Shown: positions 13,400 to 27,199 of the stretch, in pieces
Position numbering within the stretch: position 1 is the stretch's first letter
How the letters are laid out: each line of letters starts with the position of its first letter
Made by a program: the position numbers and the translations under genes
NCBI GenBank assembly: GCA_033442325.1
Contig: JAWQFM010000035.1
Span: forward strand, 202,246 to 266,245
Source: Salpingoeca rosetta
Taxonomy: Eukaryota > Protista > Choanoflagellata
Length of the DNA stretch: 64,000 nt
Direction of reading: 5' to 3'
The notes under the pieces: generated by a model
Seen by the model: only the letters and a program-made list of their open reading frames with translations
The model's database searches: none
What the model was told of the DNA's origin: nothing

Positions 13400-15472
13400 A
13401 TGGCCAAGTACCTTGTCAAGTGAGTCGAGACAACAGGAGTGGAACGTTCTTCAGGGCTGGGGAGCACTGTGGTCTTTGTTTGTGTGCTGCTCGATTGCGT
13501 GACTTTCCCATGATGCATTGTTGTCTGCCACCTGACTGCCGTTCAGCTCGATGTTCATTGCTTGCTCATCCCGGCGCATGCACCTCTCCAACCTCACCAC
13601 CATGTCATCAATACTCCCTCACTGACAGCCGCGATGATGACGACTTGTGCTCTCTGCCGGAGATGTCGCGGGAGCACGTCTTCAACGCCATCCGCGACCG
13701 CTTCCAACAAGACATCATCTACGTGCGTCGCGTTGCGTCGTGCGTGTGTGTGTGCGTGTATCTGTGTTGTGTGTGTTGTGCGTGCGGTGTGTCGTGTGTG
13801 TGCGTATGTGCGTGTGTGCGTGTGTTGTGGCAGATCAATCCCTCAACGCGATCTTTCTCTTTGTCTCTGCTGCGCTTCTCCCACGTGCACAATCCTCAAC
13901 TTGCCCCTCCCATTCCCCCCAACACACTCACACCCTTGCACGCCATTGTACTCTCGCACTCGCAGACATACGTCAGCGACATGCTGATTGCGGTCAACCC
14001 GTGCAAGCCCCTGCCAGATCTCTACTCCATCGAGGTCAGTGCGCGCGCGCGCGTGTGATGACATGATGAGCAAAGACTTGAAAGGGGGCTTTCGGTGGCT
14101 GCAAGTGAGATCAACAGGCATGAGGGAAGCATGCAAGCAAGCGTGGTCACGTTCAGAGTGGTGGCTCACGATCAAAGACGCAAACGTTCTCACTTCCATC
14201 ACACATGGCCTGACTCAACGGCTCATGCTTATTGCCATTGTGGCGTCAACTGCAGATTGCACGGCAGTACCTGACGTTGACGTCAGCTCGCTGCCCCCCG
14301 CACATCCACGGCATCGCCCTGCGCACGTACACGCAGCTCAAGGAGACACGGCTCCCGCAGTGCTGCATCATCAGTGGCGAGAGTGGTGCAGGAAAGACGG
14401 AGAGCACAAAGCTGTTTGTCAGCCACGTGCTCAAACTTGCCATGCCGGAGAAGGACACGCTCAGTGAGTACAGCCGTGTTAGAGGAATGTTGGGACTATG
14501 CAAGTGCGTGTGAGGGGGGATCTTGTGTTGCTCATTTGTGTGGGTGTGCATGTACGCGTGGTTTTCATTGGGTGCACGTGGGTTGCGCTGTCCTTCTGCT
14601 CTTCTCGCTTGCTTCTTCGTCTCATCAAGTTTGTGTCACATCTGCATTGGAGCAGGCATCGGCCAGCACGCAAACGCGTGCGTTGACCTTCCCATCAAGA
14701 TCAACCAGGTTCAAACCAGTGAAGCATGCGCACCTGTGCTACATCTGTACGCGTGCTTCCACTTGGAACCGAAAGATCTTACACATGGATGGACACACAC
14801 ACACACGCACGCACACACACATACACACACGCTCGCTCGCTCGCATGTACAGGTCAACCCCATTCTGGAAGCGTTTGGAAACGCCAAGACCCCCCTCAAT
14901 GACAACTCGAGCAGGTACACACGCCTGCGAACCATTGCCTGCAAGCAAACAAATTAAACACTGCATATCTGTGTTTAATGATTTGGATGCGGCACACATT
15001 CACATCACATCACGCCACATTGTACTCTGTCTGTGTGTGTGGACGTTTCAGGTTTGGCAAGTACCTTCAGCTGCAGTTTGACAAGGACGGTGTAATCTCT
15101 GGCGCCTCCATGTCACAGGTGGGGGGAGGCAGTGCACATTAATTTGTATTGTTCGCTGGTGATGATCATGCCCGCTTCGCTGCAACTCGAACCTTGTTGC
15201 CTGCAGGCAACCTTGCTTTACTCCTGCCTGTGCATCCCACCTTACTCACTCTGCACGACCACTACCACCACCACCGCCGCCGCCCACGTTCAGTATCTGC
15301 TTGAGAAAGCGCGCGTGGTGCACCGGTCTGAAGGCGAAGAAAACTTCCACGTGTTCCACTACCTCATCGCTGGCCTTCCAGCAGACACAGCAGCCACCCT
15401 CCATCTCTCACCCTCAGACTACCACAAGTACGTATTTGTGCGTGCGTGCGTGCGTGTGTGTGTGTGTGTGTG

Positions 15473-15504
<32 letters not shown>

Positions 15505-16063
15505 CGTGTGTGTGTGGAAAGGAAAGTTCTTGTGGCCGTTGTGCATGATGACTTCACTTGAACAACAAATGCTCATCATGCTGCACGTCACCATCACCAC
15601 CATCAAAATGACAACAGCTTTCTGTACTCTGATGAGAGCTCTGCTGATTTGCCTCCAAGCGTCACCACCTCATTCACCAAGTCCCAAAAGGTGCGAGTGT
15701 GTTCGTGTGCGTTGCCTCTGTGTGTGGGTGTGTGCGTGTGTGCGTGTGACTGCTAGTACAAGTCTGGAAGAGACAGCATGGCTCACTCACGCGCGCTCAC
15801 ACACCGCGCACGCAAACACGCAAACGCGCATACACGCAACACATGCACACTGTCTTGTCCATGTCTCACCTCACCTCACCTCAACATCACATCTATCCCG
15901 CAACCCCCTCCATTCGTCTACCACCCCACCCCCTCCCCCCCCCCCAACACGGCACAGCTTCGGTTTCGCGAGATGCTGGATGCGATGCTGGCTGTCGGCT
16001 TCAGCACAACAGAACTGCAGCAGATCTTCGAGTCCGGTGAGCAGCGCACACAATGTGGAACCC

Positions 16064-16112
<49 letters not shown>

Positions 16113-17560
16113 TGTGTCTGTGTCTGTGTGTGTGTGTGTCTATCTGTGTGTCTGTCTGTGTGTCTGTGTGTCTGTGCCGCGGTAAGTAAGTGGCCAACGA
16201 TGGACAGGGGAAACGCACACAACGCAACACAACACGACACACCACAACACAACACAACACAACACGACACAACACAACACAACACAACACAACACGACAC
16301 GACACAACACGACACGACACAACCCAACACAACACGACACGACACAACCCAACACAACACGACACGACACAACACTTACGCGCAAGCACCACGTGCTGCC
16401 TTCCCTTGCGTTGAGCAGTTGCTGCGATCATCCACATTGGTGACATTGAGTTTGATCTCGATCCCGTCTCCGACACTGCCGTCGTCCACTGCCCGCACAT
16501 ATGCGCACGAGGTGACGACGGCGACTGTTCTTGTTCTTGTTCTTGTTCTTGTTCTTGTCCTTGTTCTTGCTGTTGTTGTTGATGTTGTTATTGTTCTTGT
16601 TGTGCTTGTTTCTTGTTCTTGTTCTTGTTCTTGTTTCCGCACGTCAGGAACGCGCGTGCTTCTGCTTTGCATGCTCTCGACCTCAACCGCTGCAGCAAGA
16701 TGACAATGCACGCATGCACCCCTCACACCCTACATTTGCTCTCTATCTCTCATTCACACACACACACGTACACACACACACACACACAAACCCGCCTCTC
16801 CCCTTTCACACTTTCACCAACCTCCAGTCGCCAATCTGTTGCAAGTTTCGGAAGAGCAGTTGCAATTGGCATTGACATTCAGCATTTCTGTCACCCGGGG
16901 CGAGAGCATCAAACGGTTCGTTGCCTGCAAGCACGATAACAACAGCATAACAATATCGCTACCTTGTCCCCTTCCACAAATGCGTTGCGTGCTTGACTTA
17001 TCGTGCATGATTGATGTGCGCCGATGTCCAACGGCTCAGGCTTGTCTGTTGGTACCATCCCACGACACATATTTATGTCTTGTTGATCGATGGCATGCAA
17101 TCTCTGTATCACCGCCATCATGGTTGCTTCCGTGGCTGTTACGGACACATTGACGCTGCACTCACGTTCTGCTCACAACAGCCGCAAGACTGTGAAGGGC
17201 GCCGAGGACTGCAGAAACACCATGGCCAAGGTTTGTGGCCAAATGAGAGAAGAAATGGGAAGAAGCGTGGGTGGATACACATCCGGTTGCCACGTATTTG
17301 TGCAAGAACTGGTGCATCTTTGTGATTCAAAGCAGCGTCTCTCATGCAGTCTAACCCAATGTCTTTAACATACACACATACACACATACATACAAACGCC
17401 GTCACACACATGCACACATACACACAAACACCCTCACACGCACGCACACACACACACTATTCCGCCCTCCCACAGGAGATTTACAGCCGTCTGTTTGAAT
17501 GGATCGTCATCCGAATCAACGAGCAGCTGTCCGCGCCGGAGGAGGTGGAGGTGAGCACAC

Positions 17561-25996: not shown

Positions 25997-26079
<83 letters not shown>

Positions 26080-26939
26080 ATGTTGATTTGCTCCTGTGTC
26101 ATCACGCTGACACGCACTCTCGTTTCAGGCGAGTTTGCTCCTCCACAGCCATTCTCACCCCCTCTTCCCTTCCTAATTGCCACTTGTTCCACAAACACAC
26201 ACACACACACACACGCCACACATGCACTTTAGATCCGGCGGCATATTGGCAGCGGCGTGTTGGTCACGGTGTGCGACAAGAGCATCTACATCACGCGAAG
26301 TGCAAAGAACCCCATCTTTGTCACAACACCCGTGCCCGCAAACCAACAGCACCTCATGCTGCCAAACGGGGAATTGCCACGCAACGAAACCATCTGTGTC
26401 TTTGATTACCAGGTGGGCTTGCATACTTTGTTGACTGCCGCTTGCATGAGTGATGGTTTCTGACGTGTTTGTTGGCAACGGTATTTGGTGATTGAAGTGT
26501 TGAACTGTTTGGTGCTTGTTGTTGTTGTTGTTGTTGTTGAAGTTGTTGTTGTTGTTAAAGTTGTTGTTGTTGTTAAAGTTGTTGTTGTTGTTGTTGTTGT
26601 TGTGTGTGCGTGTGTGTGTGTGTGCGTGCTTGTCATATTCGTTAAGCATTGGGTTTGCTGGTGGCACTTCTTTGCGTTTCTGCTGTGCCTCTACCACTTC
26701 TTACGGGACGCAACACCTCACCTTGCTCGCGACGGAATGGTTCCAATGGCAATCAGCTCTTCCGAATGAACCTGCACAAGACGTCGCCAAAGGACTGCTG
26801 GGACGCGACGCAAGTGCGCCTGCGCCTGGTACGTGCCTCAGCCGCGAGTGCATGAAGGTGGTGAATGCTCGCTTGAATGTGTCTGCTGCCACTCATTCAT
26901 GAAGGAACCCAAACACAAACACGTGCGCGCGCGCAAATG

Positions 26940-26995
<56 letters not shown>

Positions 26996-27199
26996 TGCAC
27001 AAATGCACAAATGCACTCACATGCACAAATGCACACACAAATGCACTCAAATGCACACACGCGCACGCAGGTTCGGGACCTTCCCGTGTCCAAAGGGGCG
27101 ACGTGGCTGTGCTTGCGTGCAACGCAGGCCATTCAGGCGTGGGAAAAAGTGCACGGCGTGGTCTTCAACGTTGCGCAGGCACAACACAACCACGCATAA
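13400..27199 (+). CDS. Unconventional myosin: motor, 1 IQ, long low-complexity tail, C2H2 zinc finger, Smad-like MH2 domain (about 30 exons)
   Basis: The first exon is MAKYLV (ATG 13400, donor GTGAGT). Motor motifs are DDLCSL, IYTYVSDMLIAVNP, P-loop GESGAGKTES (~14377), NPILEAFGNAKT, switch I NDNSSRFGKY, YLLEK, switch II LDIFGFE, FEQCCINLTNEELQ, FTVKHFAG, FLEKNRD, FIRCIKPD, QLNYTGVFEAVRIRREGYP and LGKTRVF. IQ motif is AQKYVHGWLAR. Splice phases are consistent from exon 22246-22387 through to the stop at 27199. Confidence 0.9.
20420..20524. repeat. Intronic 19-bp tandem repeat (CACACCACCAACCACCCAT) x ~5
   Basis: Directly visible just upstream of a myosin splice acceptor. Confidence 0.85.
25092..25187 (+). 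other. Exon encoding a C2H2 zinc finger within the myosin tail
   Basis: AG|...|GT phase-0 exon of 96 nt translating IPCVVEGCACRFSMFKELKDHLYLDHLPVETK, which matches C-x4-C-x3-F-x5-L-x2-H-x4-H. It is not in the ORF track. Confidence 0.85.
25381..27199 (+). other. Smad MH2-like domain (5 exons) at the myosin C-terminus
   Basis: GEYYEGERVVLHFETRTSACKID / VNLQECENPDRTARTERIRRHIGSGVLVTVCDKSIYITRSAKNPIFV / ICVFDYQ / VRLRLV...TWLCL. These segments follow the order and pattern of Smad MH2 (YYELNxRVGExF...VDG; LGxLSNVNR...RRHIGxGV...IFVQ; KIFxxQ; RxSFV...CWIE). Confidence 0.82.

What the first reader, a model, noticed from the sequence alone, without database searches (positions are those of the whole stretch)
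13400..27199. Myosin motor fused to a C2H2 zinc finger and a Smad MH2 domain
Seen: one phase-consistent GT-AG exon chain links an intact myosin head and IQ motif, through a ~545-aa Q/H/S/R-rich exon (22779-24415), to a canonical C2H2 finger and an MH2-like domain. Known: MH2 is the interaction domain of animal Smads, normally paired with the MH1 DNA-binding domain in TGF-beta signalling, which choanoflagellates lack. My recollection is that ZnF-MH2 proteins and MH2-bearing myosins have each been noted in holozoan surveys, so the novelty of the three-part architecture needs checking. Inference: this could preserve a pre-animal role of MH2 as a cargo or oligomerisation module on an actin motor, or be a cytoskeleton-tethered regulator released by cleavage or an internal promoter. 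An in-frame Met (MTEKPEL, ~24743) just upstream of the finger could start a stand-alone ZnF-MH2 isoform.
Basis: partly seen in the sequence, partly recalled or inferred. Interest (0 to 1): 0.87.

Follow-up and report, generated by a model that had tools for sequence, protein, structure and literature searches.

The report
Choanoflagellate myosin with zinc-finger–MH2 tail
This is one real 34-exon Salpingoeca rosetta gene for an unconventional (class III-like) myosin whose tail ends in a single C2H2 zinc finger and a Smad-type MH2 domain. The myosin–MH2 and finger–MH2 combinations were each already published, so it is a confirmed but largely known curiosity.

Summary
A 34-exon, all GT-AG chain (ATG 13400, TAA 27197-27199) gives an uninterrupted 1629-aa protein. 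It has a short N-terminus, an intact myosin motor, one IQ motif and a 545-aa low-complexity exon. It ends in a conserved helix, one C2H2 finger and an MH2 domain.

The genome is Salpingoeca rosetta. Complete transcript-derived ORFs of Hartaetosiga balthica (1664 aa) and Salpingoeca infusionum (1656 aa) are collinear with the whole chain, so the fusion is conserved. Monosiga brevicollis carries the same helix–finger–MH2 cassette as a 512-aa stand-alone gene, with no motor within 10 kb upstream.

The MH2 is Smad-type: Pfam above threshold, R-Smads at E~1e-11, and a fold match to Smad MH2 at E~1e-13. It has no MH1, no SSXS tail and a shortened L3 loop.

Novelty is low. Sebé-Pedrós et al. 2014 reported an S. 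rosetta myosin III-like protein with a C-terminal MH2, and Pang et al. 2011 noted the Monosiga MH2 plus C2H2 finger. New here are the union of the two, its conservation, and the motorless Monosiga orthologue.

Read evidence in S. rosetta could not be obtained. The proposed internal-Met isoform is untested, and that Met is not conserved.

The parts
13400..27199 (+). Whole coding region: 34 exons, 1629 aa, ATG 13400-13402, TAA 27197-27199
   Evidence: Spliced model with no stop and all introns GT-AG. It is collinear with P0001 (H. balthica, 1664 aa) from 13627 to 27178.
13400..13419 (+). Exon 1: start codon and first 6.7 codons (MAKYLV-), donor GTGAGT
   Evidence: After splicing to 13629 the start reads M-A-K-Y-L-V-N-R-DDDDLC, which parallels M-N-R-Y-L-R-T-R-E-DDDLC in P0001. 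There is no N-terminal kinase domain.
13629..21757 (+). Exons 2-24: myosin motor domain (about aa 8-703). Exons: 13629-13722, 13966-14034, 14256-14477, 14853-14914, 15052-15118, 15294-15427, 15618-15690, 15958-16036, 16419-16511, 16828-16915, 17182-17230, 17476-17550, 17795-17860, 18108-18196, 18520-18613, 18908-18997, 19241-19302, 19563-19653, 19874-19950, 20547-20634, 20891-21028, 21362-21498, 21673-21757
   Evidence: tblastn and junction refinement. P-loop, switch I and switch II are intact. The motor is 57% identical to the H. balthica motor. Orthologues hit Pfam Myosin_head at E 1e-180.
21987..22386 (+). Exons 25-26 (21987-22145, 22246-22386): neck with one IQ-like motif (AQKYVHGWLARVQYKR), followed by a conserved charged helix
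   Evidence: The second exon aligns with P0001 827-861 at 40% identity.
22779..24415 (+). Exon 27: 545-aa Q/H/S/R-rich low-complexity linker with a cluster of RRxS/T sites at its distal end
   Evidence: It has no Pfam hit and no database hit. Orthologues carry an unalignable linker of similar length.
24707..24824 (+). Exon 28: end of the basic/Ser-rich linker plus a conserved amphipathic helix (SFIEFLHQFEIDRTTL) directly before the finger. It contains the non-conserved in-frame Met at 24744-24746
   Evidence: The helix is conserved in all four species and is part of the 226-bit match to the three-species profile.
25092..25187 (+). Exon 29: single C2H2-type zinc finger, C-x4-C-x12-H-x4-H
   Evidence: Both Cys, both His and the core Phe are invariant in four species. 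The profile hits YY1, ZNF410 and AEBP2 fingers at E 2e-4 to 8e-4. The model of the M. brevicollis orthologue shows a beta-beta-alpha topology at pLDDT 71-85. Pfam zf-C2H2 is below threshold.
25381..25531 (+). Exon 30: start of the MH2 domain (…GEYYEGERVVLHF…)
25863..25927 (+). Exon 31: MH2, segment before the IRRHIGSG motif
26233..26412 (+). Exon 32: MH2 core (IRRHIGSG…NPIFV…ELP…VFDYQ)
   Evidence: Pfam MH2 at 26.6 bits, above the cut-off of 25. Single copy in the genome. 63% identical to P0001.
26757..26828 (+). Exon 33: MH2, shortened helical region
27071..27199 (+). Exon 34: MH2 end with a shortened L3-loop equivalent and the last helix, no SSXS, stop TAA

Best explanation
This is one protein-coding gene of Salpingoeca rosetta. 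It encodes an unconventional, class III-like but kinase-less myosin of about 1629 aa.

Shown: it has an intact actin-motor ATPase head, one IQ (light-chain) motif and a ~560-aa disordered basic/Ser-rich linker. Its C-terminal cassette is an amphipathic helix, a single C2H2 zinc finger and a Smad-type MH2 domain. The whole arrangement is conserved in at least two other craspedid choanoflagellates as complete single transcripts. The cassette also exists without a motor in Monosiga brevicollis.

Inferred: the finger-MH2 cassette is the cargo or partner-binding end of the motor. The MH2 lacks MH1, the SSXS tail and a full L3 loop. It therefore cannot work as a receptor-activated Smad and more likely acts as a protein (possibly phosphopeptide) interaction module. 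A lone finger more likely supports that module or a protein or nucleic-acid contact than sequence-specific DNA binding. The RRxS cluster just upstream is a plausible regulatory phosphorylation region.
For: - Gene model: 34 GT-AG exons with no stop.
- Organism: an NCBI S. rosetta protein matches G000 exons at 100%, and the genome is 55.4 Mb.
- Collinearity: P0001 aligns from head to MH2 across the window.
- Orthologues: P0001 and P0006 are 'type:complete' Trinity/TransDecoder ORFs of H. balthica and S. infusionum, both with head, finger and MH2.
- Cassette conservation: the window cassette scores 226 bits against a profile of the three other species, with 37 invariant columns including the four zinc ligands.
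- MH2 by sequence: 42-54 bits in orthologues against a cut-off of 25. The profile hits R-Smad MH2 at E 3e-11, Smad4 at 2e-5 and IRF4 only at 0.06.
- MH2 by fold: the AF2 model of the M. brevicollis cassette has pLDDT 74.7. It matches Smad MH2 structures at E 1e-13 to 1e-12 with TM ~0.7, ahead of IRF domains at E ~1e-9.
- Motor class: nearest named relatives are myosin III, IIIb-like and XVI. WIN+Hbal+Sinf form a 100%-supported clade inside that group.
- Expression, indirect: probable RNA assemblies X4-X8 hold 0.50-0.51 of the sampled words of 21800-27400. That fits all exons plus the UTR (0.44-0.48) better than the myosin part alone (0.33).
- Literature.
Against:
- The public annotation of this gene could not be retrieved. 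Own-genome records appear to be withheld.
- M. brevicollis shows the cassette can be a separate gene.
- Pfam zf-C2H2 is below threshold: 17.7 bits against 25.2, and only in M. brevicollis.
- The structural evidence comes from an orthologue at ~25% identity, not the window protein.
- The function (cargo binding, phospho-regulation) is inference only.
Confidence: 0.85

Rival explanations
1. There are two products from one locus. Besides the full-length myosin, an internal promoter or start, such as the Met at 24744, yields a free helix-finger-MH2 protein like the M. brevicollis one. This free protein could act away from actin, for example in the nucleus.
For: M. brevicollis encodes the cassette as a 512-aa stand-alone protein. 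Its upstream neighbour lies on the other strand, and no myosin head lies within 10 kb upstream. The in-frame Met lies 14 codons before the conserved helix.
Against: The Met is absent at the aligned position in H. balthica and S. infusionum. Both of those species yield complete fused ORFs. Nothing in the sequence marks a promoter, and read evidence is unavailable.
Confidence: 0.1
2. These are two separate genes in S. rosetta: a myosin ending in or just after the low-complexity exon, and an independent finger-MH2 gene. The phase-consistent chain would then be fortuitous.
For: The situation in M. brevicollis. Retention of intron 24416-24706 would end the myosin ORF at 24573-24575.
Against: All three junctions are in phase with canonical sites. 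Exon 24707-24824 starts in mid-codon, with no ATG before the conserved region other than the non-conserved Met. Two relatives express the fusion as one complete ORF of nearly the same length: 1664 and 1656 aa against 1629 aa. A 2014 survey already lists an S. rosetta myosin with a C-terminal MH2.
Confidence: 0.04

Closest known systems
S. rosetta (and Oscarella carmela) 'myosin III-like' with C-terminal MH2 (Sebé-Pedrós et al. 2014, PMC3942036)
   Same: Almost certainly this very gene. It is from S. rosetta, has a III-like motor and a C-terminal PF03166, and the MH2 exon is the only copy in the genome.
   Different: The paper's main text never mentions a zinc finger. [quoted passage not shown] The related sponge protein I could read (Corticium candelabrum, P0011) has head, IQ, coiled coil and MH2 with no finger. 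Its motor is not sister to the choanoflagellate clade in a quick tree.
Monosiga brevicollis MH2 + C2H2 protein (XP_001743193.1 / A9URE2, MONBRDRAFT_23172; noted by Pang et al. 2011, PMC3169577)
   Same: It has the same helix, C-x4-C-x12-H-x4-H finger and MH2 cassette, preceded by a basic/Ser-rich region. The cassette is 25% identical to the window's, with 37 columns invariant across four species.
   Different: It is 512 aa with no motor. Its upstream neighbour lies on the other strand, and tblastn finds no head within 10 kb upstream.
Smad proteins (R-Smad, Co-Smad, I-Smad)
   Same: The MH2 domain matches by sequence profile (E 3e-11 to R-Smads) and by predicted fold (E ~1e-13, TM ~0.7).
   Different: There is no MH1 and no C-terminal SSXS. 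The L3-loop equivalent is ~6-7 residues shorter and the helical region is shorter. The domain sits at the end of a myosin.
Drosophila Expansion N-MH2 domain (PDB 4r9p)
   Same: It is a non-Smad protein carrying an MH2 fold. It is the best structural match of the model (E 2.7e-14) and a profile hit at E 5.7e-11.
   Different: It is an animal protein with the MH2 at the N-terminus, and has neither a motor nor a finger. The relationship beyond the shared fold was not analysed.
Class-80 myosins of Ambulacraria and related lophotrochozoan orphans (Kollmar & Mühlhausen 2017, PMC5583752)
   Same: They are myosins with a C-terminal MH2 domain.
   Different: They are metazoan. None appeared among the top 120 motor relatives, and none was available for direct comparison.
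Metazoan myosin III / IIIb-like / XVI
   Same: They are the nearest named motor domains, at 35-39% identity, and fall in the same large clade.
   Different: There is no N-terminal kinase (class III), no ankyrin repeats (XVI) and no SH2 tail (IIIb-like). The tail here is finger plus MH2.

Membership tests
Myosin superfamily (Myosin_head, PF00063) | Complete motor domain with P-loop GESGAGKT, switch I NxNSSRFGK and switch II DIxGFE | tested here: met
   All three motifs are present in the spliced model. The exons are collinear with P0001, whose head matches PF00063 positions 2-679 of 679 at E 1e-180.
Myosin class III sensu stricto | N-terminal protein kinase domain before the motor | tested here: not met
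   The protein starts 7 residues before the conserved DDDLC motor entry. The orthologues also lack a kinase. It is therefore 'III-like' by motor similarity only.
MH2 domain (PF03166) | Sequence match above the Pfam gathering score | tested here: met
   The window ORF 26233-26460 scores 26.6 bits against a cut-off of 25. The orthologues score 42.1, 46.6 and 53.7 bits. The profile hits R-Smad MH2 chains at E 3e-11.
MH2 domain (PF03166) | MH2 (SMAD/FHA-type beta-sandwich) fold | tested here: met
   Tested on the orthologue only. The AF2 model of the M. brevicollis cassette (pLDDT 74.7) matches more than 40 Smad MH2 chains at E 1e-13 to 1e-11. The window protein itself was not folded, because a spliced sequence has no reference.
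Smad transcription factors | N-terminal MH1 DNA-binding domain | tested here: not met
   Pfam finds only Myosin_head, MH2 and IRF-3 in the full-length orthologues. In the window the whole N-terminal part is a motor.
Smad transcription factors (R-Smad) | C-terminal SSXS phosphorylation motif and full-length L3 loop | tested here: not met
   The protein ends …AQAQHNHA. The L3 equivalent between 'VR' and 'W' is 9 residues, against 16 in Mad and Smad1 in the HMM alignment.
C2H2 zinc finger (PF00096) | C-x2-4-C-x12-H-x3-5-H with conserved hydrophobic core, and a beta-beta-alpha fold | tested here: met
   The pattern is present, and both Cys, both His and the Phe are invariant in four species. PDB profile hits to YY1, ZNF410 and AEBP2 fingers fall at E 2e-4 to 8e-4. 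The orthologue model has the hairpin and helix in the right places at pLDDT 71-85.
C2H2 zinc finger (PF00096) | Pfam gathering score | tested here: not met
   P0004 scores only 17.7 bits against 25.2. There is no hit in P0001 or P0006 or in the window exon.
IRF association domain (IRF-3, PF10401) | A better match than to MH2 | tested here: not met
   IRF-3 scores are lower than MH2 scores in all full-length orthologues. IRF4 reaches only E 0.06 in the PDB profile search. IRF folds rank below all Smads.
Class-80 myosins (Kollmar 2017) | Motor-domain monophyly with the ambulacrarian MH2 myosins | not tested

The most novel reading that the evidence does not exclude
The helix-C2H2-MH2 cassette is an autonomous, pre-Smad signalling module. 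In S. rosetta it would be produced both tethered to an actin motor and, from an internal start or by cleavage in the RRxS-rich linker, as a free factor that can enter the nucleus. That would make it a cytoskeleton-gated 'proto-Smad' with the finger standing in for MH1. The motorless Monosiga gene would be the fixed free form.
Probability: 0.06. Interest if true: 0.8.

Novelty: already known. Interest (0 to 1): 0.3.

Why it matters
MH2 is one of the few 'animal signalling' domains that predate animals, so its context in choanoflagellates bears on how Smads arose. It was already proposed in 2014 that MH2 first sat on a myosin.

This check adds four points:
- The S. rosetta myosin-MH2 and the Monosiga 'zinc finger-MH2' are the same conserved cassette.
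- The fused form occurs in three craspedids.
- The one sponge myosin-MH2 examined lacks the finger.
- The choanoflagellate MH2 lacks the Smad activation features.

These points refine the published story without changing it. S. rosetta is genetically tractable, so the function of a pre-animal MH2 can be tested directly on this gene.

Tried and rejected
There is therefore no read-level evidence. Those places lie in the intron 24825-25091. No letters of them were sent as a query or reference to any search tool afterwards. Local scripts did read the whole window file, and one search used the window as the tblastn subject.
2. The search for homologous proteins with the low-complexity exon gave no hit. 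With the P0001 cassette region it returned only P0001 itself. Proteins of the window's own genome seem to be withheld, so the public gene model could not be compared.
3. The genome search with PF03166 on the own genome found nothing, and nothing rang in the controls either, so the result is uninformative.
4. The first AF2 run, on the H. balthica cassette with 3 sequences, failed at pLDDT 38.6 and was not used.
5. The ESM Atlas search was blank.
6. The supplements of the 2014 myosin paper contain no 'MH2' string.
7. Hits P0002, P0003 and P0005 of the 60-aa exon search are repeat-rich proteins with unrelated Pfam content (P0003 was not examined) and were rejected as spurious.
8. The long minus-strand ORFs inside the gene have no Pfam match and look like repeat artefacts.
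9. For the 14463/14776 junction, an alternative encoding a Thr-His repeat from a CA repeat was rejected in favour of 14477|14853.
10. No complex prediction was run, because no specific binding claim is made.

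
Full report
**What is there**

The window is eukaryotic, with short exons and introns full of (TG)n/(CA)n. It lies in a 55.4-Mb, 68-contig genome. That genome is Salpingoeca rosetta, because an NCBI S. 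rosetta protein (P0022) matches its exons at 100% identity.

I rebuilt the gene from the sequence. The C-terminal exons were read directly. The motor exons were anchored by tblastn with an orthologue and refined on GT/AG and frame.

The result is 34 exons, all with GT-AG introns. The ATG is at 13400 and the TAA at 27197-27199. The coding sequence is 4890 nt, giving 1629 aa with no internal stop. Three motor junctions are less certain (14477|14853, 19950|20547, 21757|21987) and do not affect the argument.

**Anatomy**

- The protein starts only 7 residues before the motor entry motif, so there is no kinase domain.
- The motor has an intact P-loop, switch I and switch II.
- One IQ-like motif and a conserved charged helix follow (exons 21987-22145 and 22246-22386).
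- Exon 22779-24415 encodes 545 aa of Q/H/S/R-rich low-complexity sequence. It has no Pfam or database match.
- The distal part of that exon and the next exon carry a cluster of RRxS/T sites.
- Exon 24707-24824 ends in an amphipathic helix.
- Exon 25092-25187 is a single C-x4-C-x12-H-x4-H finger.
- Five exons from 25381 to 27199 encode the MH2 domain.
- Long minus-strand ORFs inside the gene have no Pfam match.
- The MH2 core exon is single-copy in the genome.

**Is it one gene?**

Read evidence failed. Local scripts did read the whole window file.

The case therefore rests on comparison. A search of 1.84 billion representatives with the 60-aa MH2 exon found three relevant proteins:
- Hartaetosiga balthica, 1664 aa.
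- Salpingoeca infusionum, 1656 aa.
- Monosiga brevicollis XP_001743193 (A9URE2), 512 aa.

The first two are Trinity/TransDecoder ORFs marked 'type:complete'. They are single transcripts encoding head, linker, finger and MH2.

The H. balthica protein aligns collinearly with the window from 13627 to 27178. The window's C-terminal cassette scores 226 bits against a profile of the other three species, covering helix, finger and MH2.

There is also an indirect hint of expression. Five probable RNA assemblies hold 0.50-0.51 of the sampled words of 21800-27400. The expected share is 0.44-0.48 if all exons and the UTR are present, and 0.33 if only the myosin part is.

I put the single-gene reading at about 0.85-0.9.

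**The Monosiga case**

The M. brevicollis protein is the same cassette preceded by a basic/Ser-rich region. Its upstream neighbour is on the opposite strand, and tblastn with both full-length orthologues finds no motor within 10 kb upstream. So a motorless form exists in nature.

From my own recollection of choanoflagellate phylogeny, Monosiga is nested among species that have the fused form. That would make motor loss or gene fission the likelier direction. I did not test this.

**Domain identities**

MH2:
- It passes Pfam in the window ORF (26.6 bits against 25) and in all three relatives (42-54 bits).
- A profile of the three cassettes hits R-Smad MH2 chains at E 3e-11 to 2e-9, Smad4 at 2e-5 and Smad7 at 8e-5. 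IRF4 reaches only 0.06.
- A first AF2 attempt failed at pLDDT 38.6.
- A second attempt, on the M. brevicollis cassette with nine rows, reached pLDDT 74.7 and pTM 0.66.
- That model matches Smad MH2 structures at E 1e-13 to 1e-11 with TM about 0.7, ahead of IRF domains. The non-Smad Drosophila Expansion N-MH2 (4r9p) is the top hit.

Compared with Smads, the choanoflagellate MH2 has no SSXS tail and no MH1. Its L3-loop equivalent is about 6-7 residues shorter, and the helical region is also shorter. This agrees in substance with an earlier scan note, s1-442288. 'Shortened' is a fairer word than 'lacks'.

Finger:
- All four zinc ligands and the core Phe are invariant in four species.
- The profile hits YY1, ZNF410 and AEBP2 fingers at E 2e-4 to 8e-4.
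- The model has the hairpin and helix in the canonical places.
- Pfam zf-C2H2 stays below threshold.

**Motor class**

A full-length profile search puts myosin III, IIIb-like (SH2), XVI and choanoflagellate III-like paralogues closest. In a quick ML tree of 44 motors, the window groups with H. balthica (support 99) and then with S. infusionum (support 100). That clade sits inside the III/III-like/XVI assemblage.

The only other MH2-bearing myosin in the top 120 hits is from the sponge Corticium candelabrum. It has head, IQ, coiled coil and MH2 with no finger. It is not sister to the choanoflagellate clade in this tree, though support is weak. Its MH2 scores 52 bits against the choanoflagellate profile, about the same as the 46 bits for animal R-Smads in the PDB search.

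**How it probably works**

Shown: this is an actin motor whose distal end is a conserved helix-finger-MH2 cassette on a long flexible linker.

Inferred:
- The cassette is the partner or cargo-binding end.
- It lacks the Smad activation features, so it is not a receptor-activated Smad.
- MH2 domains are protein, and often phosphopeptide, interaction modules. The conserved RRxS cluster just upstream is therefore a candidate regulatory or intramolecular ligand region.
- A free isoform from the Met at 24744 is possible but unsupported. That Met is not conserved.

**What is known**

- Sebé-Pedrós et al. [quoted passage not shown] They propose that MH2 first appeared on myosins. Their main text does not mention a finger.
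- Pang et al. 2011 note the Monosiga MH2 coupled to a C2H2 finger.
- Kollmar & Mühlhausen 2017 define class-80 myosins with a C-terminal MH2.
- Richter et al. 2018 and a 2019 domain study list MH2 as a choanozoan innovation.

The headline architecture is therefore already known.
- The two published observations concern one cassette.
- The three-part form is conserved in three craspedids.
- Monosiga has a motorless version.
- The one sponge version examined lacks the finger.

**Verdict**

Novelty is low and interest about 0.3.

Noticed in passing
window 24100-24745 (end of exon 27 and start of exon 28); P0001 ~1270-1370, P0006 ~1200-1400, P0004 ~175-260: A cluster of basophilic-kinase-type RRxS/T sites sits just upstream of the helix-finger-MH2 cassette in all four choanoflagellates, although the linker is otherwise unalignable. 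Within the 220 aa before the finger, S. rosetta has 7 of its 10 sites. It could be a phospho-regulated region next to a possible phosphopeptide-binding domain.
   Followed up: partly
L002 10001-12089 (M. brevicollis CH991544.1): The Monosiga finger-MH2 gene stands alone, between a Josephin-like gene on the minus strand and a large laminin-N/EGF gene on the minus strand. No myosin head lies within 10 kb upstream.
   Followed up: yes
P0011 (Corticium candelabrum, 'myosin-IIIb-like', 1253 aa): This sponge myosin has a long E/R/K-rich coiled coil leading directly into an MH2 that keeps a more Smad-like 'FVKD…PCWLEI' segment. It has no C2H2 finger, and about 150 further residues follow the MH2.
   Followed up: partly
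window 22246-22386: A charged helix after the IQ motif (…VNIASQIAAMAALKMRAKKAL) is conserved with H. balthica and S. infusionum. It may be a second light-chain site, a single alpha-helix or a dimerisation segment.
   Followed up: no
window 486-585, 9647-10144, 12071-12361, 40708-40807, 48294-48393: These are runs of N (assembly gaps). The one at 12071-12361 lies about 1 kb upstream of the start codon, so the promoter and 5' UTR region is incompletely assembled.
   Followed up: no
window 13723-27070 (introns of the gene): Most introns begin with GT followed by (TG)n and many end in (CA)n, which produces long spurious Cys-Val or Thr-His 'ORFs' in all frames. This is also the subject of another scan note (s1-442260). 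It was used here only to reject one alternative junction.
   Followed up: no
It lies inside intron 24825-25091 and is not part of the coding sequence.
   Followed up: no
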